A stretch of 64,000 bases of DNA, from the IMG/VR virus record IMGVR_UViG_3300034104_005687, positions 248,001 through 312,000 of that record; one strand, given 5' to 3'. A program made the translations under genes and the position numbers. Below, one piece after another: positions 19,817 to 28,648 of the stretch. The first letter of the stretch is position 1. Each line of letters begins with the position of its first letter. A model generated the notes under the pieces. It was not told the DNA's origin. It made no database searches and saw only the letters and a list, made by a program, of their open reading frames with translations.

Positions 19817-20470
19817 ATGATAGTAAAAAGTTTCGGTTGCAGCTTTGTATGGGGGTCTGAACTATCAGATATCAACCTTAAAAATAAAAAGTTCAGTTCA
19901 TTGACATGGCCTGCTCTGATTGCAAACAAAAAACAAGCCCAATATCAGTGTCACGCTCGCCCTGGTGCTGGAAATTTCTTTATATTACAAAGTCTGCTGA
20001 ATCAGTTACAAGATCCCGACGATCTATACATTGTGAACTGGACGTTTCACGGACGGTATGATTATGTGTTTGCACACGGTGAAAAAACTACAACATCGTG
20101 GCATTCAATCACACCTTGGGACATGCACGATCGTGCAAAATTTTATTATCAAAATTTTCACAGCGAACTTGTTGACAAGTTGCAAAATTTGATCTGGATA
20201 TCGTCAGCTGTTGCAGCGTTGACTGAGGTCAATGCAAAATTTTGCATGACCTATATGGACAACTTGTTGTTTGACAGTCGATGGAACTGTACTCCGGCAA
20301 TGATCAAATTACAAGAAACGGTTAGACCTCATCTACATCAATTTGAAGGACAGAACTTTGTTGATTGGAGTCAAAAGAATCAATATCCCATAGGATCTGT
20401 GGGCAATCATCCCTTGGAGCAAGCACATGCAGCAGCGGCTGAATACCTGATAAATCAACGTTTGGTATAA
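19817..20470 (+). CDS. SGNH-hydrolase-like protein
   Basis: 'FGCSFVWG...TWPALIA...ARPGAGN' plus C-terminal 'HP..AH'. Confidence 0.55.
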   Translation: MIVKSFGCSFVWGSELSDINLKNKKFSSLTWPALIANKKQAQYQCHARPGAGNFFILQSLLNQLQDPDDLYIVNWTFHGRYDYVFAHGEKTTTSWHSITPWDMHDRAKFYYQNFHSELVDKLQNLIWISSAVAALTEVNAKFCMTYMDNLLFDSRWNCTPAMIKLQETVRPHLHQFEGQNFVDWSQKNQYPIGSVGNHPLEQAHAAAAEYLINQRLV

Positions 20471-21189
20471 ACAAAATACAACCTACCTAGTTCGGTAGGT
20501 TCTTTTTTGAACGTATCTAAAGTCAAGTTGTAGCGTTCAGCAAACTGATTTACAATTTCAAATGTCCAAGGAAAAATATCCACATAGGGACCAGTCTTGT
20601 GCGGGATACCTGGATTGGCTCGCAAAAAGAATTTACCACCAGGCTTCAACAAGTTCACACAGTGTGCAAATCTTTCTTCAATTTCATCTTGTGAGTTAAA
20701 GTTGATACTGCCCAGTGCAATAATCACATCATGTGATTCTGGCTTTACTTTGTAGTCTAGAATATCTACTTCATAATCAGCTGCATCATTGTAAGGATCA
20801 ATACCAACAATATTGTGTATGCGATCTTTAAACGGGTGATAGCCACAGCCCACATCCAGAACTTTTTCAGGATTTAGTTTGTTTACTTCTTCCACTAGTG
20901 CCCATCCTGAGTGATCATATTCACCAGTTCTGGGACGCCAGATTTCACTGAAGAAACGATGTGTGTAACGCTCGCTTAGATCTGCTACAATTTCTTTTAT
21001 TGTGCCACGATATTCACATGGCAAAAACAACTCAGCATCCACAGCATCTTTGAATTTGCTGTAGCGAGCCGGCGTCCACGGCAGTGATTGCACGTTGGTA
21101 TCAGCATCAAAAGAAATATTTGCATACTTGGGTAAATTAAATGCAAGTTGCAAATTTTTTGTAATTAGGTTAAAAATTTTGGTGTTCAT
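20455..21189 (-). CDS. Class I SAM-dependent methyltransferase with a small N-terminal extra domain
   Basis: 'VLDVGCG', 'GIDP' and 'LLKPGG' motifs. Confidence 0.8.
   Translation of the reverse strand: MNTKIFNLITKNLQLAFNLPKYANISFDADTNVQSLPWTPARYSKFKDAVDAELFLPCEYRGTIKEIVADLSERYTHRFFSEIWRPRTGEYDHSGWALVEEVNKLNPEKVLDVGCGYHPFKDRIHNIVGIDPYNDAADYEVDILDYKVKPESHDVIIALGSINFNSQDEIEERFAHCVNLLKPGGKFFLRANPGIPHKTGPYVDIFPWTFEIVNQFAERYNLTLDTFKKEPTELGRLYFVYTKR
20480..20508 (+). terminator. Rho-independent terminator
   Basis: AACCTACC-tagttc-GGTAGGTT hairpin followed by CTTTTTT, just after the stop at 20470. Confidence 0.65.
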
Positions 21190-21243: not shown

Positions 21244-22203
21244 ATGATCAAGAAATTTCTACTTGCCTTGTTGCTGGTGCCTGCTTTGGCCACTGCTTGG
21301 CAACCCACAAAACCAGTTACTGTGGTATTCCCCAATGGCCCCGGGGCCGGAAACGAAATATCATTTCGTATTGTAGCAGACATTGTGGAACGGAAAACTG
21401 GAGCCAAATTCAATTCTGAATATCGCCCAGGAGCTGACGGCAACATTGCTATCAATCACTTTGTGACAACTCCCCGCGATGGACACACCATTAGTGTGCC
21501 TGCTTGCCAATCAAATTGGGTCACACCTGAAATCTGGTATCCCAACATGATCAAGTACAGCCCAATGGATCTGGAACCCATTGCCAACATTGCTCGCTCA
21601 CCCCTAGCATTTTGGGCACATCCGTCAAGCAAGATCAACACTCCGGAAGAGTTTGTTGCAGCCATTCGTAATAAGCAACGAATGACTGTGGCTATTGGCG
21701 GTGGCGGGCACAAGCTGGCAGTGGAATATCTTGTGGACAAGGTCAGTGTGGCTGGCAGTGATAACTTACAAACTGCTATGTACAAAGGTCCAGCACAGGC
21801 CCTGTTGGATGTCATGGGCGGGCACGTGGAATTTGGCGTAACTCCCGTGGCAGTGGGATATCCTCATGTACAAGCAGGCAAACTCAAGTTCATTGGCATT
21901 GCTGATACACGCCCACTGCCAGGGTTGGAGCACATTCCTTTGATGAGCAAAGCAGCGCCAGGACTCAGCATACACGGCTGTTGGAACATGGTATTGCCAC
22001 CAGGTACACCCCTTGAAATCCAAGCATGGTATCGTGATCAGTTTGTGCCTGCAATTCGCAGTGCAGACGCTGCTGTGAAGTTTCGTGAAAACATGATGTA
22101 CATTACGCCAGAAGAACACAGTGCCGCAGGTGTTAGAGTCAGCATGGCACGTTTGCAGCAGACATGGCAACCCATTGCTCGCAGAATTGATCCCAACAAA
22201 TGA
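21244..22203 (+). CDS. Bug/TctC-family periplasmic solute-binding protein (tripartite tricarboxylate transporter receptor)
   Basis: Signal peptide, 'WQPTKPVTVVFPNGPGAG', 'RPGADGNIA', 'PRDGHT', 'YKGPAQALLDVMGGHV', 'GKLKFIG', 'PPGTP'. AAGGAG RBS. Confidence 0.88.
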   Translation: MIKKFLLALLLVPALATAWQPTKPVTVVFPNGPGAGNEISFRIVADIVERKTGAKFNSEYRPGADGNIAINHFVTTPRDGHTISVPACQSNWVTPEIWYPNMIKYSPMDLEPIANIARSPLAFWAHPSSKINTPEEFVAAIRNKQRMTVAIGGGGHKLAVEYLVDKVSVAGSDNLQTAMYKGPAQALLDVMGGHVEFGVTPVAVGYPHVQAGKLKFIGIADTRPLPGLEHIPLMSKAAPGLSIHGCWNMVLPPGTPLEIQAWYRDQFVPAIRSADAAVKFRENMMYITPEEHSAAGVRVSMARLQQTWQPIARRIDPNK

Positions 22204-22829
22204 AATATATCTTTGTAGCCGGTGCTCCGGGCTCTAAATGGAGCAGCGTGGTCAAAAACATCTATTACTCACCCAGTATCGATCAAAGTGACTACCGAGA
22301 CGAGTGGACCTATTATCACGATGCGTCTGGCCAGCGCGAACTCATGCATTTGGGTGCATACTGGGATCCAGGCATGGCATGCGACCTGCCCGCGGATCTC
22401 ACTACACTTACACAACAACAACTGGAGGAAAAATTCAATGAACCATTCAACCAGGATTCTGCAGGAATCCGAATCATCAAAAGCCATATCTTCTCGTATG
22501 AACAAAATATCAGATACCTGCGTCAGCAGTTCGTAGATTGTGCCATTGTGCTGGTTCATCGCAGCGATGATGCTTGCCTGGGTTGGTGGGTAAAGTGCGG
22601 ACACTTTGACATCACTTACCCCAGTTATGCAGGTTACTATCAAAACTTAAAAAATATGGCCAGCATAATTAAACAGCAAAATACAGGTATACGTCAGGCC
22701 TGGACTCACTACACAGGTTCTGAACCACAGACCAATAGACTGCTGGCTACTGAGCTGGGTATTGAAACGCCACCATTGGAATACATACAAGACTACCACA
22801 TGAGCAACATCAAGGTAAAAGTAATATGA
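22200..22829 (+). CDS. Hypothetical protein, possible P-loop/sulfotransferase-fold
   Basis: 'IFVAGAPGSKWSS', 'IIKSH', 'IVLVHR' pattern. Confidence 0.45.
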   Translation: MKYIFVAGAPGSKWSSVVKNIYYSPSIDQSDYRDEWTYYHDASGQRELMHLGAYWDPGMACDLPADLTTLTQQQLEEKFNEPFNQDSAGIRIIKSHIFSYEQNIRYLRQQFVDCAIVLVHRSDDACLGWWVKCGHFDITYPSYAGYYQNLKNMASIIKQQNTGIRQAWTHYTGSEPQTNRLLATELGIETPPLEYIQDYHMSNIKVKVI

Positions 22830-23476
22830 CACAAAGCAACTGGGAAATAACAAGACAACGCAGTCAATATCATTTTGACAACAGCCGAATGGACCCACGT
22901 TGGGACACTGTACAACAGCTGGGACACATTGCGCCCTGTTGGCATGCGGAATTATCTGAAGCTATCGCAGCATCAACACCAGTGACTTGGCGCACTCGTG
23001 GTCGAGACAACGATCCACTGAAACGTGCATCAGAGGAATACGATCAAGAAGATTATGATCTAGAACAGCAGGGCTATGGTCGAGATCACATTGTTACAGA
23101 CTTGAACTACAACCTGGCACCTGTGTTTCAGCACATTGCTGATCAGTTTGCCTTGGACAAAAGCATGGCTCGCATACACGTACAACGCCCAGGACAGACC
23201 TGGAACCTACACTTAGACAAGCTGGAAAAATGGATGCCAGCAGATCCCAGTCAGGTAGTACGATACTTTGTGCAACTCACAGACTGGCAACCTGGACATT
23301 TTTGGAGTTATGGCAATTACAACTGGTCAGGTTGGCGTGCTGGAGATGTTTCAACTTTTGACTGGGTCAATGTGCCCCATGCAACAGCCAATGCAGGACA
23401 TGTGCCCAGAGCAACACTGCAGATCACCGGAATTAAAACCGCTGCCACAGACACTTTCTTAAATAGTATACTATGA
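22826..23476 (+). CDS. Cupin/2OG-Fe(II) oxygenase-like protein
   Basis: HxD 'LHLD', distal 'PHATANAG' and 'RATLQITG'. Confidence 0.65.
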   Translation: MTQSNWEITRQRSQYHFDNSRMDPRWDTVQQLGHIAPCWHAELSEAIAASTPVTWRTRGRDNDPLKRASEEYDQEDYDLEQQGYGRDHIVTDLNYNLAPVFQHIADQFALDKSMARIHVQRPGQTWNLHLDKLEKWMPADPSQVVRYFVQLTDWQPGHFWSYGNYNWSGWRAGDVSTFDWVNVPHATANAGHVPRATLQITGIKTAATDTFLNSIL

Positions 23477-24270
23477 AACAACCTCAACGTATTCTTATCA
23501 TGGGCCTGCCCGGTGCAGGCAAAACATATCTAGCTCAACAACTAAAGCAACAGCTTGAAAGTCACGGATCTACTGTAGGCTGGCTCAACGCCGACGAAGT
23601 TCGACGTCATTACAACGACTGGGATTTCAGTCGTGAAGGGCGTATACGTCAAAGCCTGCGTATGCGTGATCTTGCTGATGAAAGCAACACAGACTATGTA
23701 ATTGTGGACTTTGTGGCCCCACTGCCCGAAATGCGTCACAACTTCAAAGCTGATTGGTGTATCTGGATGGATACCATTGATGCAGGACGCTACGAAGACA
23801 CCAACAAGATGTTTGTGGAACCTGATGTTTACGATTTCCGTATTACAGAACAGGCAGCAGAAAAATGGTCAGAGTTTGTGGCCGAGCACATCCAGGACAA
23901 TCGTCGCAGACCTGTGTTTGACTGGCAGCGAGAAACAGTTCAAATGCTGGGACGTTGGCAACCATGGCATACAGGCCATCGTGCACTGTTTGAACGTGCT
24001 ATTGCCAAAACAGGGCAAGTTGTGATTCAAATCCGTGACTGCCAAGGCTGGCAAGGGTCAAACCCATTTGCTATAGAACAGGTCAAAAGTTACATACGCA
24101 GAGATCTAGATCCTTTGTATCAGGGACAATACGAAATACAAGTTGTGCCCAATATTGTGAACATTACCTATGGGCGAGATGTTGGTTACAAAATTGAACA
24201 AGAAGTATTTGATGATGCTACTCATTCAATAAGTGCTACTAAAATACGCCGGAGCATGGGGCTTGAATGA
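23473..24270 (+). CDS. cysC: Adenylylsulfate (APS) kinase fused to an HxGH nucleotidyltransferase domain
   Basis: N-terminal 'MGLPGAGKT', 'LNADEVR', 'DFSREGR', 'DFVAP'. C-terminal 'GRWQPWHTGH' and 'ISATKIR'. Confidence 0.8.
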   Translation: MKQPQRILIMGLPGAGKTYLAQQLKQQLESHGSTVGWLNADEVRRHYNDWDFSREGRIRQSLRMRDLADESNTDYVIVDFVAPLPEMRHNFKADWCIWMDTIDAGRYEDTNKMFVEPDVYDFRITEQAAEKWSEFVAEHIQDNRRRPVFDWQRETVQMLGRWQPWHTGHRALFERAIAKTGQVVIQIRDCQGWQGSNPFAIEQVKSYIRRDLDPLYQGQYEIQVVPNIVNITYGRDVGYKIEQEVFDDATHSISATKIRRSMGLE

Positions 24271-24466
24271 TACTACTGCTAGAAGTTTAGTAAAAACCGT
24301 GACATGGAGAGTCACTGGATCGACTGCTACATTTCTGATTGCGTATGCAATGACTGGCAACTTTGCTGTTGCTGGCGTGATAGGGGTGACTCAAATGATA
24401 TCTAACACCATTCTGTACTATATTCACGAGCGGGCATGGAATCGCATTACATGGGGAGTAAAATGA
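24263..24466 (+). CDS. DUF2061-like small membrane protein
   Basis: 'RSLVKTVTWR...YYIHERAW..I.WG'; TTG start after GGAG. Confidence 0.75.
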   Translation: MNDTTARSLVKTVTWRVTGSTATFLIAYAMTGNFAVAGVIGVTQMISNTILYYIHERAWNRITWGVK

Positions 24467-25320
24467 TATTGCCTAGCTTGGTGTTGCCAAGTCGCATAAA
24501 TCAGCACTGGCAATTTTCAGGAATGGATCATATTGACCAGTGCTTTGACAAGAATCATTTTTTGTCATATCCTTACAGTATAACTTACAAGTACAACAGT
24601 CGTGGGTTCCGTGATCAAGAATGGCCCGACACCATGCAAGAATTGCGCAACGCAATATGGTGTATTGGTGACAGCTTCACTGTCGGTCTGGGGTCGCCGC
24701 TGGAACACACCTGGGCATTTCGACTGTCACAGATTGCCAATCGTCGTATCATAAATGTTTCAATGGACGGTGCCAGCAATGAATGGATTGCAAGAACTGC
24801 AAAAAACATTGTTCAAGTTGTTGATCCTGCACAACTTGTAATAATGTGGAGTTACACTCATCGTCGGGAAAGCATCAAAACGTCATTGAGTGATGAATTT
24901 CGAAGAATATATAGCAGTAACTGCACTGACCACGAAGACTGGGAGAATTTCGTAGACTGTAAAAAAAGAGTTGATTTGATTGCAAACTCGGTGCAATTTG
25001 CAGTACCTTGTTTTCGTCATGAACCACCGTTGATTCATCAGAGTTGGTGGGAATCAATACGTGGCACTAACTGGCCAGCAAACCCTCCGACTACACCCCA
25101 AGAATTAAATTCATTGCCAGACTGGATATTGCATGAACTAAAAAATTTGCATGGAAGATTAGACGAATACAGAGATATTGTGACAAGACAACAGTTGTAT
25201 TCTCCACTTCCTGCTACAGTTATACAAGTTGAATCTCAAGATCTTGCTCGAGACGGTCATCATTTTGATTTGATTACAGCTGATTGGGTGGCAACTCAGG
25301 CAACGAGCCGGTTGAATTAA
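24463..25320 (+). CDS. SGNH-hydrolase-like protein
   Basis: 'YNSRGFRD', 'IGDSFTVG', 'NVSMDGASN', C-terminal 'DGHH'. Confidence 0.6.
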   Translation: MILPSLVLPSRINQHWQFSGMDHIDQCFDKNHFLSYPYSITYKYNSRGFRDQEWPDTMQELRNAIWCIGDSFTVGLGSPLEHTWAFRLSQIANRRIINVSMDGASNEWIARTAKNIVQVVDPAQLVIMWSYTHRRESIKTSLSDEFRRIYSSNCTDHEDWENFVDCKKRVDLIANSVQFAVPCFRHEPPLIHQSWWESIRGTNWPANPPTTPQELNSLPDWILHELKNLHGRLDEYRDIVTRQQLYSPLPATVIQVESQDLARDGHHFDLITADWVATQATSRLN

Positions 25321-26518
25321 AGATAGAATTCCAAAATTCTGACTCTGTATGTGTTTTTTCTAACAAGTATTGATCAGTAACTGGTGACGCTGTTTCTGGG
25401 TTGGCCTGAGCCCAGTCGTTGTATATCTCGATCAACTGTTCAAAATTTCTTATTGTTTTTTGTTTTTCAGACAGTGTTTGTTTTTTGATTGGAGGCCCAC
25501 TTATCATTATACCCAACTCAATCATTTGATTTATGGTTTGTTGTGCCTGATCATATCCGTGTTTGAATTGAACCAATGCTTGCTGCTGCGGATGACTCAT
25601 CAGAGACACTACTCCTTCGTGACGTATTAGATTTTGTGCCCATTGCTGCTGTAACTCCGTTGGTAAATTAGCAATATCCTCTACAGAGTGCACTGCCGGC
25701 CAATGCTCAGGAGCGTGCTGTTGGTAATGTTTTACAACGTCAGTTTGTTCCAGTAGTAATTTGTTCAAATCGCTGGGTTTTTCCAGGGGCAAATGATTTA
25801 GATCGCTGCGAGCATAGTGCATCTTGTTCCAGTCATTGAAACTTATGCCAAAATTCTGATTCCATGTTACGCGATTAGATTGAGAGGAAAACACCGGTAG
25901 GTCAAGTATGTATTGTTCTAGTCTAGGAATATCTTTTTCGTAGTTGAAATACGAAGCAATGTCAAAATGTTGCTCGCTCCAGTCAACATACAGTTTGTAT
26001 GCATCCAACTGTCGCTCAAATACCACAGGATCCAGAGTCACTCCCGATTTGTATATTTCGTAAAATGCGTTGATTTTTTCATAGGCAGTGTATACATTTA
26101 GTTTTTTGGTAATTGTGTTCAATGTCATGCTGAGAGCGTGCTCAAACACATTGGCACGCCTACAAGCAATCACATAAAAGTTTTCATTGAGATAGTGATA
26201 AAAAGGAACTTGTTGTTCCATGGTGTCACCACGTCGACGAATATGATAATGTGCCAAGCGTGACGTTTTGTAGTGATCTACACCGTCCAACAACTCTGTT
26301 ACTTGTTGCAGTGTTTGATGATATCCCCAGTCTTTTACTGTTTTTTTGCTGACAATTTCTCGACCAAATTCAGGGCTGTAGTACTTGGCCAGTCCGTTGG
26401 TGAGTTCGTGCATGTTGATAACAGGGCGACCAAAGTCATGAAACTGCATGTAAATGGTCAGCATGCGTTGCAACAAGGTGCTGCCCACAGCATCAGGAGT
26501 GAGAATTAGAACGTTCAT
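25274..26518 (-). CDS. Sulfotransferase-like protein
   Basis: 5'-PSB-like 'TPDAVGSTLL' and 3'-PB-like 'RRANVFEHALS', as in Stf0-type sulfotransferases. Confidence 0.55.
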   Translation of the reverse strand: MNVLILTPDAVGSTLLQRMLTIYMQFHDFGRPVINMHELTNGLAKYYSPEFGREIVSKKTVKDWGYHQTLQQVTELLDGVDHYKTSRLAHYHIRRRGDTMEQQVPFYHYLNENFYVIACRRANVFEHALSMTLNTITKKLNVYTAYEKINAFYEIYKSGVTLDPVVFERQLDAYKLYVDWSEQHFDIASYFNYEKDIPRLEQYILDLPVFSSQSNRVTWNQNFGISFNDWNKMHYARSDLNHLPLEKPSDLNKLLLEQTDVVKHYQQHAPEHWPAVHSVEDIANLPTELQQQWAQNLIRHEGVVSLMSHPQQQALVQFKHGYDQAQQTINQMIELGIMISGPPIKKQTLSEKQKTIRNFEQLIEIYNDWAQANPETASPVTDQYLLEKTHTESEFWNSIFNSTGSLPELPPNQL

Positions 26519-27297: not shown

Positions 27298-27641
27298 GAT
27301 ACAGAGAAATACTGGAATCTTGTTGGAAGGGCTATCAGCGTGTGCCAGGCACAGCTGAATACTCACCAGGCAGTTGTGAAAAGATCAGTGAAACAGATCT
27401 TGAAGAAGACCTGCGTAAATGGTTCAAACAAAAGTGGGTGAGATTTGGACCTGACGGCAAGATCCGTGGAGACTGTGCTAGAGGTTCAGAAAAGGAAGGC
27501 AAACCCAAGTGTTTGCCACAGGCCAAGGCACATGCCCTGGGCAAGAAGGGTCGTGCGTCAGCAGCGGCTCGCAAACGTCGTCAAGACCCTGACGCCAATC
27601 GCAGAGGAGCGGCCATCAACGTGGCCACAAAGAAAAAATGA
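27294..27641 (+). CDS. Basic hypothetical protein, putative internal head protein
   Basis: 'MRYREILE' leader followed by two Cys-containing modules, the second Lys/Arg-rich. Confidence 0.55.
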   Translation: MRYREILESCWKGYQRVPGTAEYSPGSCEKISETDLEEDLRKWFKQKWVRFGPDGKIRGDCARGSEKEGKPKCLPQAKAHALGKKGRASAAARKRRQDPDANRRGAAINVATKKK

Positions 27642-28648
27642 AAATCAATCAATTTGTAAACGAATCCCACATGACCTGTCCCGAGTGCGGCGGCCCTGCT
27701 TTCAGTGATCTGCTGTTGGCAGAAAAGAAAGACGCTTGCTATCACAAGGTCAAAGCAAGTGCCAAGGTATGGCCGTCAGCGTATGCGTCTGGACGACTGG
27801 TGCAGTGCCGCAAAAAAGGTGCTGCCAACTATGGCAACAAATCTGAAGGTGTGGCCGAAGATGCTGTGGCAGACTTTGTGGCTCGCGGCGGCCAGATACA
27901 AAAAGGAAAACTACACAAACCACGTAAGGGTGAAACTTGGCAAGGATCATCACATATTGGCGCAGCGGGTGGACAAGGTACAAAAGGTACAGTGTCAGGT
28001 CGAGCTGCAAACACCAACCCAAAGGGTGGTAAACCAGTGGTCAGTGCCGAAGGTTACAATCCTGAATACGATGACGAAGCAGGCATGGCTGACAACAATC
28101 TCGAAACGCTAGAACGTGCAGTCAAAGGCATTGATGACCTAATTCAAGCCGGTGACAACTTGCCAGAATGGTGCCAAGAAAAGATTGCTGTGGCAAAAAG
28201 CATGTTGGTAAGTGTATGGGACTACATGTATTCAGAAGAAGCCAGTGACGAAGTAGATCCTGAAGTCGATGAGATGTTTGAAGCCATGGATCAGTTAGCA
28301 GAAGAGCTGGCTGCCAAGCACAAGGTCAATGTAGACACTGTGTGGGAAAGTTTTGAACAGCTGGATGATCGCATTCTGTACGAAACTGCTGCATGGCGAC
28401 GCAAAGAAGGCAAAAGCAAAACAGGCGGACTCAATGCCAAGGGTGTGGCCAGCTATCGTCGTGAGAACCCAGGATCAAAACTGCAAACTGCTGTGACCAC
28501 AAAGCCAAGCAAACTGAAGCCTGGATCAAAGGCTGCCAAACGCAGAAAGAGCTTCTGCGCCAGAATGTCGGGCGTAAAAGGCCCAATGAAAAAGCCCAAC
28601 GGCAAACCAACTCGCAAAGCACTAGCACTGCGCAAGTGGAACTGCTGA
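27638..28648 (+). CDS. Modular basic/acidic hypothetical protein, putative internal head protein
   Basis: 'MKINQFVNE' leader; modules separated by LAE/VAE/SAE/LYE motifs. Confidence 0.55.
   Translation: MKINQFVNESHMTCPECGGPAFSDLLLAEKKDACYHKVKASAKVWPSAYASGRLVQCRKKGAANYGNKSEGVAEDAVADFVARGGQIQKGKLHKPRKGETWQGSSHIGAAGGQGTKGTVSGRAANTNPKGGKPVVSAEGYNPEYDDEAGMADNNLETLERAVKGIDDLIQAGDNLPEWCQEKIAVAKSMLVSVWDYMYSEEASDEVDPEVDEMFEAMDQLAEELAAKHKVNVDTVWESFEQLDDRILYETAAWRRKEGKSKTGGLNAKGVASYRRENPGSKLQTAVTTKPSKLKPGSKAAKRRKSFCARMSGVKGPMKKPNGKPTRKALALRKWNC

What the first reader, a model, noticed from the sequence alone, without database searches (positions are those of the whole stretch)
23473..24270. APS kinase fused to a minimal HxGH nucleotidyltransferase: a possible 265-aa PAPS synthase
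Seen: a CysC domain followed by a ~115-aa domain with 'QPWHTGH' and 'ISATKIR'. Established: Sat-type ATP sulfurylases belong to the HxGH superfamily (HxGH and IS.T..R motifs) but are much larger. Inference: a very compact sulfate-activating enzyme supplying PAPS to phage sulfotransferases.
Basis: partly seen in the sequence, partly recalled or inferred. Interest (0 to 1): 0.62.

Follow-up and report, generated by a model that had tools for sequence, protein, structure and literature searches.

The report
Compact candidate PAPS synthase in phage
A 265-residue jumbo-phage protein fuses a shortened APS kinase to a tiny nucleotidyltransferase that probably activates sulfate; the same two parts are also a near-core gene pair in the ocean bacteria SAR11 and SAR86, which have sulfotransferases but mostly lack any known way to make their sulfate donor.

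Summary
Window 23473-24270 (+) encodes a 265-aa protein: a shortened APS-kinase domain (aa 1-147) and a 118-aa HxGH nucleotidyltransferase (NT) domain (aa 148-265) with QPWHTGH and ISATKIR. The NT domain is not Sat-like: no ATP-sulfurylase profile matches, and it descends from NadM/archaeal NMN adenylyltransferases, minus about 27 residues. Independent comparative evidence nevertheless favours the proposed function, sulfate to APS to PAPS. (1) The same mini-NT is fused to canonical CysC in other proteins. (2) In related phages the commonest neighbour is a bona fide sulfotransferase, often overlapping the fusion's start. (3) The two domains form a gene pair in 75/101 sampled SAR11 and 55/61 SAR86 genomes. 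(4) In both lineages the pair is mutually exclusive with CysD+CysNC. (5) A complete SAR86 genome has strong sulfotransferases but no Sat, CysD, AprA or canonical CysC. Housekeeping CoA/NAD roles are excluded because CoaE and CoaD/NadD-sized genes are present. Weak points: no biochemistry; sulfotransferases in this phage itself are detected only weakly; Sano-like phages place a NADAR gene beside it. Confidence is about 0.6. If true, this is an unrecognised third type of sulfate-activating enzyme.

The parts
23473..24270 (+). Gene for the 265-aa kinase-nucleotidyltransferase fusion (P0001). Its ATG overlaps the upstream gene's TGA by 4 nt (ATGA).
   Evidence: family searches
23473..23913 (+). 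Domain 1 (aa 1-147): shortened APS-kinase-type P-loop kinase
   Evidence: Pfam PF01583 42.4 bits, partial; CysC Z 18.6; Foldseek top 50 all APS kinases
23503..23526 (+). Walker A / P-loop GLPGAGKT (aa 11-18); K17 invariant in the family
23587..23595 (+). N-A-D (aa 39-41), counterpart of the CysC D-G-D loop. D41 (44/47) aligns with the proposed catalytic base. Position 39 is N in 29 and D in 15 of 47 members.
   Evidence: alignment to APS kinases; conservation; PMC4373884
23602..23664 (+). Acceptor-site segment (aa 44-64) holding R44 (invariant), F52, R57, Q60, R63. These align with the CysC residues that bind APS, including Phe492 and Arg497 of M. tuberculosis CysC.
23770..23835 (+). Shortened lid region (aa 100-121) with conserved D109, T110, F114, P117. 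It is much shorter than the CysC lid, and the Pfam match ends before it.
   Evidence: comparison with P0213
23914..24267 (+). Domain 2 (aa 148-265): minimal HIGH-superfamily nucleotidyltransferase, the candidate ATP sulfurylase
23950..23979 (+). GRWQPWHTGH (aa 160-169): nucleotide-binding HxGH motif in its NadM/archaeal-NMNAT form (GRFQPFHxGH)
24034..24036 (+). R188 (46/47 in the family) at the end of strand 2, where the aligned NMNATs have Gly (IGS). Candidate anion-binding residue (inferred).
24169..24189 (+). YGRDVGY (aa 233-239). G234, R235 and G238 are invariant. Family-specific motif that replaces about 27 residues of NMNAT; shares G-R-D with the sulfurylase GRDHAG loop (the latter recalled from memory).
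24229..24249 (+). ISATKIR (aa 253-259): C-terminal ISxTxxR nucleotide-phosphate-binding motif; R259 invariant
22200..22829 (+). 209-aa neighbour in the same overlapping-gene operon; probable remote sulfotransferase (candidate PAPS consumer)
   Evidence: Atlas features 0.95-0.98 to viral 'sulfotransferase family' clusters; hhalign to verified phage sulfotransferases: probability 51%, E 1.6e-4. No Pfam, NCBIfam or PDB hit.
25274..26518 (-). 414-aa neighbour, conserved next to the fusion in a related jumbo phage; possible Stf0-like sulfotransferase (weak)
   Evidence: Atlas features 0.94-0.95 to Stf0 sulphotransferase clusters; synteny in L013. Not supported by hhalign or Pfam.
24233..24466 (+). 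DUF2061 small membrane protein gene overlapping the 3' end of the fusion; link to the system unknown
   Evidence: Pfam PF09834 78 bits; present in 14 of 80 related loci

Best explanation
The gene encodes a two-step sulfate-activating enzyme, i.e. a compact PAPS synthase. The C-terminal 118-aa HxGH nucleotidyltransferase adenylylates sulfate (ATP + sulfate -> APS + PPi). The N-terminal shortened APS kinase phosphorylates the 3'-OH of APS to give PAPS, which pulls the unfavourable first step. The phage uses PAPS for sulfotransferases that it or its host encodes, probably to modify envelope glycans. SHOWN: the two folds; conservation of the catalytic and APS-contacting kinase residues; intact HxGH and ISxTxxR motifs; the NT's descent from NadM-type NMNATs with a deletion of about 27 residues; the fusions; the neighbourhoods; the phyletic patterns. 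INFERRED: that sulfate is the acceptor, that R188 and R235 bind it, that the product is PAPS, and what the target of sulfation is.
For: (1) Rosetta-stone fusion. P0213 and its relatives, and locus L042, join an orthologous mini-NT to a canonical full-length CysC (PF01583 212 bits, whole model; LDGDNLR, FISP and FTGI motifs all present). P0189 has the reverse domain order. The NT and kinase are fused or adjacent in 66 of 78 assessable bacterial loci. (2) Kinase. APS kinases are the closest structures by a clear margin. D41, F52, R57 and F114 align with the catalytic base Asp480, the adenine-stacking Phe492/Phe576 and Arg497 of M. tuberculosis CysC. (3) Phage neighbourhoods. In 72 related phage loci the commonest neighbour family (25 loci, 33 genes) passes Pfam Sulfotransfer_3 (68 bits) and Sulfotransfer_1 (44 bits). 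All are on the same strand, nearly all upstream within 4 kb, and in 6-8 loci the stop overlaps the fusion's start. (4) Cellular genomes. The NT is in 75/101 sampled Pelagibacteraceae and 55/61 SAR86 genomes. Strong CysD hits occur only in NT-negative genomes (6 in SAR11, 1 in SAR86), and five of these carry canonical CysNC about 2 kb from CysD. Sat occurs in 3/101 and 0/61. (5) Consumers without a known supplier. 59/101 SAR11 genomes have PF13469 sulfotransferases; 56 of them have the NT, CysD or Sat, and for 48 the NT is the only candidate route. The complete SAR86 chromosome G002 has two sulfotransferases at E 1e-43 to 1e-47 but no Sat, PAPS_reduct, AprA or canonical CysC. (6) The NT lacks about 27 residues that NMNATs have between strand 3 and the GY(E/K)(V/I) segment, and gains invariant R235 and near-invariant R188. 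(7) Kinase-N/sulfurylase-C is the domain order of animal PAPS synthase (1x6v aligns over both domains).
Against: No biochemical data exist for any member. The NT's nearest relatives by sequence and structure are NMN adenylyltransferases and PPAT (Z 10.3-10.5); the best sulfurylase reaches Z 8.8 and others 5.7-6.5, and no sulfurylase profile matches. In this phage no sulfotransferase is detected by Pfam or by an HMM of verified phage sulfotransferases. Sulfotransferase adjacency is confined to one phage clade: 0/16 distant loci and 0/80 bacterial loci. In Sano-like phages the overlapping upstream gene is a NADAR domain, which points towards NAD/ADP-ribose biology. The first Asp of the DGD loop is Asn in this protein, and D87A abolishes the activity of human APS kinase, though 15/47 family members keep Asp. 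The lid is much shorter than in CysC. The same short kinase is fused to a PF00483 nucleotidyltransferase in P0258. 24 of the 75 NT-positive SAR11 genomes show no PF13469 gene. Phyletic patterns are not phylogenetically independent, and the SAR86 replicate rests on a single CysD-positive genome (Fisher p = 0.098).
Confidence: 0.6

Rival explanations
1. The pair makes a PAPS-like donor that is not sulfate-based. The NT couples an NTP to another small anion (for example phosphoramidate or a phosphonate) and the kinase adds the 3'-phosphate. This mirrors Campylobacter Cj1416 (nucleotidyltransferase) plus Cj1415 (kinase; its homology to CysC is recalled from memory), which help make CDP-phosphoramidate 3'-phosphate.
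For: Precedent for the pathway product: PMC11800397. The short kinase is fused to a PF00483/PF12804 nucleotidyltransferase in P0258, next to a CTP_transf_3 gene. The marine fusion P0133 sits in a nonulosonic-acid/polysaccharide cluster with an aminotransferase, a methyltransferase and a pyruvate-kinase-like gene. The chemistry is the same as in the main explanation, so fold and motifs cannot distinguish the two.
Against: The verified neighbours in phages are sulfotransferases. Complementarity is specifically with CysD+CysNC. The NT is fused to a canonical CysC. No glutamine-kinase or amidohydrolase partners were seen beside the pair in SAR11 or SAR86.
Confidence: 0.12
2. It is an NAD-salvage enzyme analogous to NadR. 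The kinase phosphorylates nicotinamide riboside and the NT adenylylates NMN to NAD+, helping the phage counter NAD-depleting defences.
For: The NT's best sequence and structure matches are NadM, archaeal NMNAT and NadR. It carries the GRFQPFHxGH and NPF motifs of that family. A NADAR gene overlaps the fusion in Sano-like phages. Phage NadR/NadM systems are known (PMC9503650).
Against: About 27 NMNAT residues between strand 3 and the GYEV segment are missing; from memory, this segment includes the nicotinamide-binding helix. All NCBIfam NMNAT scores are far below cut-off (27 against 127). The kinase is APS-kinase-type (Z 15-18.6) rather than NRK- or NadR-type (human NRK1 Z 10.5; AAA_28 17.8 bits) and keeps the APS-contacting residues. 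There is no NADAR gene in this phage. SAR11 and SAR86 already carry full-length CoaD/NadD-sized HIGH transferases. This model does not explain the exclusivity with CysD/CysNC or the sulfotransferase linkage.
Confidence: 0.08
3. Only the kinase works in sulfur metabolism (APS to PAPS, with APS supplied by the host's CysDN, Sat or AprAB). The NT domain has a separate or regulatory role, for example binding a nucleotide or adenylylating an unrelated metabolite.
For: SAR11 has AprAB, which can supply APS from sulfite (bioRxiv 10.1101/2024.12.23.630198). Fungal sulfurylases carry a non-catalytic APS-kinase-like regulatory domain (own knowledge). Kinase-only homologs exist in Ralstonia phages.
Against: HxGH, ISxTxxR and the family-specific Arg residues are invariant or nearly so, as expected for a catalyst. 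SAR86 has no AprA, Sat or CysD, so APS has no other known source there. The NT persists alone in some SAR11 genomes, so it has a function of its own.
Confidence: 0.1
4. The pair replaces a housekeeping step, either CoA synthesis (PPAT plus dephospho-CoA kinase) or NAD(P) synthesis.
For: PPAT ties for the best structural match (Z 10.4). JGI names some members phosphopantetheine adenylyltransferase. Dephospho-CoA kinase also phosphorylates an adenosine 3'-OH. The pair is near-core in streamlined genomes.
Against: All five SAR11/SAR86 genomes tested have CoaE, and each has full-length CTP_transf_like genes of CoaD/NadD size. 26/101 SAR11 genomes lack the NT.
Confidence: 0.03

Closest known systems
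Animal bifunctional PAPS synthase (PAPSS1/2) and bacterial/fungal Sat-CysC fusions (e.g. Aquifex aeolicus 2gks)
   Same: One polypeptide combining an APS kinase with a HIGH-superfamily nucleotidyltransferase. The domain order (kinase N-terminal, transferase C-terminal) is that of PAPSS. The kinase fold and APS-site residues are shared.
   Different: 265 aa against about 550-620 aa. The transferase domain is 118 aa, has no PUA-like domain and no PF01747 match, and descends from NMNATs rather than Sat. The kinase lid is truncated, and DGD is NAD in this protein.
CysD-CysN(C) GTP-coupled sulfate adenylyltransferase plus CysC
   Same: Proposed to do the same two-step job. The two systems replace one another across SAR11 and SAR86 genomes.
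   Different: Unrelated folds (PP-loop ATPase plus GTPase). There is no GTPase partner here, so the unfavourable equilibrium would have to be pulled by the kinase and pyrophosphatase alone.
NadM / archaeal NMN adenylyltransferase (MJ0541, M. thermautotrophicus NMNAT, Francisella NadM-Nudix) and NadR
   Same: Closest relatives of the NT domain: GRFQPFHxGH, NPF, GY(E/K)(V/I) and SxTxxR motifs; profile E 6e-12 to 4e-10; Z 10.3-10.5. NadR also joins a HIGH transferase to a P-loop kinase.
   Different: About 27 residues shorter; has the family-specific invariant YGRDVGY motif and R188; scores far below NCBIfam cut-offs. The partner kinase is APS-kinase-type, not RNK-type. There is no Nudix or NadV partner.
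Campylobacter jejuni Cj1416/Cj1415 (cytidine diphosphoramidate synthesis and 3'-phosphorylation)
   Same: The same logic: a nucleotidyltransferase makes a nucleotide-anhydride and a kinase adds a 3'-phosphate, giving a PAPS-like donor (PMC11800397). That Cj1415 is CysC-like is recalled from memory.
   Different: Cj1416 has the other (GT-A-like) nucleotidyltransferase fold. Its partners are a glutamine kinase and an amidohydrolase, not sulfotransferases.
Eukaryotic CoA synthase (PPAT-DPCK fusion)
   Same: A HIGH-family adenylyltransferase fused to a P-loop kinase that phosphorylates the adenosine 3'-OH of the first product. PPAT is a top structural match.
   Different: Different kinase family (CoaE). 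The genomes that carry the pair already have CoaE and CoaD-sized genes.

Membership tests
APS kinase (CysC, PF01583) | P-loop kinase fold of the APS-kinase type | tested here: met
   Z 18.6 (4rfv), 17.9 (2yvu), 16.8 (2gks) against 13-14.6 for the next kinase families; Foldseek top 50 all APS kinases
APS kinase (CysC, PF01583) | Profile membership | tested here: inconclusive
   Pfam 42.4 bits exceeds the 21.1 cut-off, but only model positions 3-93 of 152 match. NCBIfam apsK scores 32.7 against 138.7, and PRK05541 scores 45 against 127, so those are not met.
APS kinase (CysC, PF01583) | LDGD loop: the second Asp is the catalytic base at the APS 3'-OH; the first Asp assists Mg-ATP | tested here: inconclusive
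   The second Asp is conserved (D41, 44/47). The first is Asn here (N 29, D 15 of 47). Residue roles are from PMC4373884 and PMC8528679.
APS kinase (CysC, PF01583) | APS-site residues: two Phe stacking the adenine, and Arg contacting the adenine N1 | tested here: met
   R44 invariant; F52, R57, Q60 and F114 at 90% or more. The alignment to CysC covers the segment up to aa 92. The equivalence of F114 to the lid Phe is inferred by position.
APS kinase (CysC, PF01583) | Full-length lid (about 30 residues, with the Lys and Arg that contact ATP) | tested here: not met
   The lid is much shorter and the Pfam alignment stops before it. Compare the canonical KGLYKKARAG...FTGI of P0213.
APS kinase (CysC, PF01583) | Catalytic activity: APS + ATP -> PAPS | not testable with these tools
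   needs an enzyme assay
Sat-type ATP sulfurylase (PF01747) | Profile membership | tested here: not met
   No PF01747 hit on the domain at E<=10 or in the genome. The family profile finds no sulfurylase in the PDB at E<=10.
Sat-type ATP sulfurylase (PF01747) | Shared HIGH nucleotidyltransferase fold | tested here: met
   T. thermophilus ATP sulfurylase 1v47_B: Z 8.8, 115/118 residues aligned; other sulfurylases Z 5.7-6.5. NMNAT and PPAT score higher.
Sat-type ATP sulfurylase (PF01747) | QxRNPxHxxH and GRDHAG sulfate/APS-binding motifs; N-terminal PUA-like domain (motifs recalled from memory) | tested here: not met
   The sequence reads GRWQPWHTGH and YGRDVGY: only P-x-H..H and G-R-D are shared. 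There is no N-terminal PUA-like domain; the domain is 118 aa.
Sat-type ATP sulfurylase (PF01747) | Activity: ATP + sulfate -> APS + PPi | not testable with these tools
   Supported only indirectly
NadM / archaeal NMN adenylyltransferase | GRFQPFHxGH, NPF and SxTxxR motifs and profile similarity | tested here: met
   (MJ0541 6.4e-12; NadM 4e-10)
NadM / archaeal NMN adenylyltransferase | Curated family cut-offs | tested here: not met
   PRK01153 27.1 bits against 127; TIGR01527 26.4 against 181
NadM / archaeal NMN adenylyltransferase | Complete core including the segment between strand 3 and GYEV (from memory, the nicotinamide-binding helix) | tested here: not met
   The profile alignment breaks at position 81 and resumes at GY(K/E). 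107 residues align across chain residues 1-134 of 1f9a.
HIGH / cytidylyltransferase-like superfamily (PF01467) | HxGH and ISxTxxR motifs on a Rossmann-like fold | tested here: met
   Motifs are invariant in the family; fold matches. Pfam scores 19.8-20.2 against a cut-off of 21 for this protein, while relative P0155 scores 23.3.
PHROG phrog_10255 ('kinase') | Full-length profile match | tested here: met
   3.4e-48; aa 5-263 against profile positions 2-229 of 230

The most novel reading that the evidence does not exclude
The 118-aa domain is a third, unrecognised class of ATP sulfurylase that evolved from NadM-type NMN adenylyltransferases by loss of the nicotinamide-binding segment. Together with the short APS kinase it is the missing sulfate-activation route of SAR11 and SAR86. 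It would supply PAPS to the sulfotransferases of their hypervariable surface-glycan regions and, in SAR11, could also release sulfate and ATP from AprAB-made APS. Phages would carry the fused form as an auxiliary gene to sulfate envelope structures.
Probability: 0.5. Interest if true: 0.9.

Novelty: new variant of a known kind. Interest (0 to 1): 0.8.

Why it matters
Only two kinds of sulfate-activating enzyme are known, Sat and CysDN. A third one of about 120 residues would be the smallest known and a clear case of non-orthologous displacement. It would also address an open gap in marine microbiology. Pelagibacter is reported to lack assimilatory sulfate reduction in all 135 complete genomes surveyed, yet its hypervariable regions carry sulfotransferases (bioRxiv 10.64898/2026.04.03.716430). 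AprAB is a core gene within an 'incomplete' sulfur pathway (bioRxiv 10.1101/2024.12.23.630198). The SAR11 form of the domain has 11,617 member sequences in a single 90%-identity cluster and is annotated only as 'cytidyltransferase'. For phage biology, many 'cysC' auxiliary genes reported in large phages would in fact be complete PAPS synthases paired with sulfotransferases, which points to sulfation of surface glycans during infection. A 265-aa PAPS synthase would also be useful for enzymatic sulfation.

Tried and rejected
- Megablast of 8 kb around the gene against phage records: no match.
- Pfam Sulfotransfer_1, Sulfotransfer_3, Stf0, ATP-sulfurylase and NADAR on the phage genome: none found. 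The Stf0 control found nothing in any genome, so that result is uninformative.
- DUF2061 literature: uninformative.
- The Cj1415 paper (PMC5938747) is not held, so the CysC homology of Cj1415 rests on memory.
- Housekeeping CoA/NAD replacement: rejected.
- PDB sequence searches with the 209-aa and 414-aa neighbours, and with a profile of the 209-aa family: nothing. NCBIfam: nothing.
- hhalign of the 414-aa, 294-aa, 216-aa and 217-aa neighbours against verified phage sulfotransferases: no support.
- HMM of verified phage sulfotransferases on the whole phage genome, and on distant or bacterial loci: no hits.
- Atlas structural search of the NT domain: only the family's own clusters.
- Promoter and terminator scans: chance level. 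No tRNAs in the window.
- Context of the NT-CysC fusion (MFS transporter, glutamate synthase): uninformative.
- Literature search for NMNAT nicotinamide-binding residues: no usable source.
- Test in SAR11 genomes where the kinase is not adjacent: consistent with the hypothesis, since strong sulfotransferases occur only where an intact kinase is found. However, there are only ten genomes and they are incomplete single-cell assemblies.
- Not used: read mapping, complex prediction, alternative genetic codes.
Full report
OBSERVATION. Window 23473-24270 (+) is an open frame of 265 codons with an ATG start. QPWHTGH lies at aa 163-169 and ISATKIR at aa 253-259, read directly from the DNA. The ATG overlaps the stop of the upstream ORF by 4 nt (ATGA). 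The three upstream junctions (22200, 22826, 23473) all overlap by 4 nt, so TctC-like (21244-22203), a 209-aa ORF, a 216-aa ORF and the target look like one operon. A DUF2061 membrane-protein ORF overlaps the 3' end. The window is part of a 349,369-bp IMG/VR phage record estimated 97% complete. The gene is real. One search found more than 7,799 homologs, and an exhaustive search found 2,173 representatives at 50% identity. PHROG phrog_10255 ('kinase') matches full length, and cultured Xylella, Stenotrophomonas and Xanthomonas phages carry full-length copies at 36-40% identity.

THE KINASE DOMAIN (aa 1-147). Pfam APS_kinase scores 42 bits, above its 21-bit cut-off, but matches only the first 93 of 152 model positions. 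All NCBIfam APS-kinase models fall far below their cut-offs. A model with pLDDT 94.8 matches APS kinases first: M. tuberculosis CysC Z 18.6, APE1195 Z 17.9, the Aquifex Sat-CysC Z 16.8. Gluconate kinase, PSTK and Kti12 follow at Z 13-14.6. In M. tuberculosis CysC the second Asp of LDGD (Asp480) sits at the APS 3'-OH, Phe492 and Phe576 sandwich the APS adenine, and Arg497 contacts N1 (PMC4373884). In 47 family members the aligned residues are conserved: D41 (44/47), F52 (46/47), R57 (46/47), R44 (47/47), Q60 and F114. The first Asp is Asn in 29 members and Asp in 15. In human PAPSS1 the D87A change abolishes activity (PMC8528679), so this is a caveat, softened because Asn and Asp interchange within the family. 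The lid is much shorter than in CysC. I conclude this is a divergent, shortened APS-kinase-family enzyme whose acceptor site is built for an APS-like nucleotide.

THE TRANSFERASE DOMAIN (aa 148-265). Alone it gives only a sub-threshold CTP_transf_like hit and no ATP-sulfurylase hit at E<=10. Its best PDB and NCBIfam matches are NadM and archaeal NMN adenylyltransferases. A profile of 44 family domains hits MJ0541 at 6e-12, NadM at 4e-10, the M. thermautotrophicus NMNAT at about 1e-9 and NadR at 1e-3, then PPAT at 0.015. No sulfurylase appears. The homology covers strands 1-3 and resumes at GY(K/E)(I/V)...SxTxIR, so the family lacks about 27 residues that NMNATs have in between. From memory, that segment includes the nicotinamide-binding helix. 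In its place is an invariant YGRDVGY motif, and a near-invariant Arg (R188) replaces the Gly of the NMNAT IGS motif. A domain model (pLDDT 94.4) matches NadM (Z 10.5), PPAT (10.4), MJ0541 (10.3), NadR (9.4) and then the T. thermophilus ATP sulfurylase (Z 8.8, 115/118 residues aligned). Other sulfurylases score 5.7-6.5. The fold is the generic HIGH fold and cannot identify the acceptor. The domain is therefore not a Sat-family member; by ancestry it is an NMNAT offshoot.

WHAT THE FAMILY IS LINKED TO. The two domains occur fused in either order, as separate adjacent genes, and in other combinations. The most telling case is P0213 and its cluster, and locus L042. These join an orthologous mini-transferase to a canonical full-length CysC (212 bits over the whole model, with the LDGDNLR, FISP and KGLYKKARAG...FTGI motifs). 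Among 72 related phage loci (fusion 73-92% identical) the neighbours vary greatly, but the commonest neighbour family (25 loci, 33 genes) passes both Pfam sulfotransferase models (68 and 44 bits). All these genes are co-directional, nearly all lie upstream within 4 kb, and in 6-8 loci the stop overlaps the fusion's start.

CELLULAR GENOMES. The transferase is abundant in Pelagibacteraceae (SAR11) and SAR86 at 50-60% identity to the phage domain. There it is usually a 124-135-aa gene overlapped by a 136-aa short-kinase gene. Of 78 assessable loci, 56 have the kinase adjacent, 10 have it fused and 12 have the NT alone. The NT is present in 75 of 101 sampled Pelagibacteraceae and 55 of 61 SAR86 genomes. 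Its neighbours differ between lineages, so the pair is a self-contained module.

Housekeeping explanations fail. All five genomes tested have CoaE, and each has full-length CTP_transf_like genes of CoaD/NadD size. The only APS-kinase-family gene in four of the five is the short kinase. Sat occurs in 3/101 SAR11 and 0/61 SAR86 genomes. Strong CysD-type hits occur in six SAR11 genomes and one SAR86 genome, and all seven lack the mini-transferase. Five of them carry a canonical CysC inside a 614-649-aa ORF (CysN-CysC) about 2 kb from CysD. So {CysD + CysNC} and {short kinase + mini-transferase} exclude one another in two lineages (Fisher p = 1.8e-4 in SAR11; one case in SAR86, p = 0.098; not corrected for phylogeny).

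Consumers exist. 59 of 101 SAR11 genomes have Sulfotransfer_3 genes. 56 of these have one of the candidate routes, against 3 of the 20 genomes with none (p = 1.8e-5), and for 48 the mini-transferase is the only candidate. The cleanest case is the complete SAR86 chromosome CP097973.1 (G002). It has two sulfotransferases at E 1e-43 to 1e-47 but no Sat, no PAPS_reduct family gene, no AprA and no canonical CysC; it does have the pair. SAR11 has AprA, so there the transferase could also run in reverse on AprAB-made APS. That would fit the SAR11 genomes that keep the transferase without an adjacent kinase. In ten such genomes, strong sulfotransferases were found only where an intact kinase exists elsewhere in the genome; the sample is small and made of incomplete assemblies.

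MECHANISM. The best explanation is a compact PAPS synthase. The transferase adenylylates sulfate, and the fused kinase phosphorylates APS at the 3'-OH, which pulls the unfavourable first step. This is the same logic that has repeatedly fused sulfurylases to APS kinases, and the domain order matches animal PAPSS. The shown and inferred steps are listed under the best explanation. I put confidence at about 0.6.

RIVALS. (a) A PAPS-like but non-sulfate donor, as made by Cj1415-Cj1418 (PMC11800397). Support comes from a fusion of the short kinase to a PF00483 transferase (P0258) and from polysaccharide-cluster contexts. Confidence 0.12. (b) NadR-like NAD salvage. Support comes from the NT's ancestry and from a NADAR gene overlapping the fusion in Sano-like phages. 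Against it are the missing segment, the kinase type and the sulfur-linked distribution. Confidence 0.08. (c) Only the kinase works in sulfur metabolism. The SAR86 pattern and the invariant catalytic motifs argue against this. Confidence 0.1. (d) CoA/NAD housekeeping: essentially excluded.

THIS PHAGE SPECIFICALLY. No bona fide sulfotransferase is detectable in its 349 kb by Pfam or by an HMM of the verified phage sulfotransferases. The 209-aa operon partner resembles viral 'sulfotransferase family' clusters by language-model features (0.95-0.98) and aligns to the verified family with hhalign probability 51% (E 1.6e-4). The 414-aa neighbour resembles Stf0-type clusters by features only. Both are leads, not findings. 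The consumer could also be a host enzyme.

NOVELTY. The public names are 'cytidyltransferase', 'phosphopantetheine adenylyltransferase', 'AAA family ATPase' and 'adenylylsulfate kinase'. Papers on large phages list 'cysC' as an auxiliary gene without mentioning the second domain. Literature searches found no description of this domain as a sulfurylase. The held library is incomplete, so prior work cannot be excluded. The kind of system, sulfate activation by a transferase plus an APS kinase, is known. The enzyme family proposed to perform the first step is new, so I class it as a new variant of a known kind.

LIMITS. Everything functional is inference from comparative genomics. Genome samples include incomplete assemblies. 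Presence/absence statistics ignore shared ancestry. The roles of R188 and R235 were not checked against model coordinates.

Noticed in passing
window 24233-24466 (+): A 77-aa DUF2061 membrane-protein gene (78 bits) overlaps the 3' end of the fusion by 38 nt (8 nt if the TTG at 24263 is the start). A homolog is present in 14 of 80 related phage loci. Its function and any link to sulfate handling are unknown.
   Followed up: partly
window 21244-22203 (+): A phage-encoded TctC/Bug-family periplasmic solute-binding protein (78 bits) is the first gene of the same overlapping-gene operon. It is conserved next to the fusion in a related 347-kb phage (L013).
   Followed up: no
L002:5559-6002 (Xylella phage Sano gp34) and L003 (Bacata gp32): In Sano-like phages a NADAR-domain gene (92 bits) overlaps the start of the kinase-transferase fusion. 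The gene before it (gp33) gives a sub-threshold Sulfotransfer_4 hit (20.7 bits against 22.8). The sulfate model does not explain the NADAR pairing.
   Followed up: partly
P0258 / L012:2133-3302: The same short-kinase family is fused to a PF00483/PF12804 nucleotidyltransferase beside a CTP_transf_3 gene. This may be a one-protein analogue of Campylobacter Cj1416+Cj1415.
   Followed up: partly
L008-L010 (TARA metagenome scaffolds): A marine full-length fusion (P0133) lies in a surface-glycan cluster: a pyruvate-kinase-barrel protein of only 316 aa, an unlabelled 555-aa protein whose stop overlaps the fusion's start, an aminotransferase, a methyltransferase, GFO_IDH_MocA, CTP_transf_3 and an epimerase.
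   Followed up: partly
G036:C1:283943-284289, G031:C8:7199-7546, G172:C6:16287-16696: Apparent pseudogenes in SAR11: the transferase is split into two frames in G036 and carries an in-frame TAA in G031. The short kinase in G172 is broken by several stops.
   Followed up: no
L033:8367-9218 (Pelagibacter sp. HIMB1495): The gene directly downstream of the SAR11 kinase/transferase pair matches HalD/WelO5-type Fe(II)/2-oxoglutarate halogenases (46 bits). It is conserved there in several SAR11 loci.
   Followed up: no
window 24436-25320 (+) and 19817-20470 (+): Two unlabelled ORFs carry SGNH/GDSL-like N-terminal motifs (GDSFTVG; FGCSFVWGSE). The first has a weak NCBIfam GDSL-esterase hit (24 bits). 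A similar family recurs beside the fusion in 7 related loci.
   Followed up: partly
window 27638-28648 (+): A 336-aa protein with a C-terminal DUF6321 domain (79 bits) matches nine PHROG families of unknown function, usually at their C-termini. It looks like a widely shuffled phage module.
   Followed up: no
window 20480-20501: A perfect 8-bp-stem hairpin with T-runs on both strands lies between the convergent genes 19817-20470 (+) and 20455-21189 (-). It looks like a bidirectional terminator.
   Followed up: no
L126:3522-4682 and 13 other related phage loci: RCC1-repeat (beta-propeller) proteins (273 bits) are the second most frequent neighbour family of the fusion in related phages.
   Followed up: no
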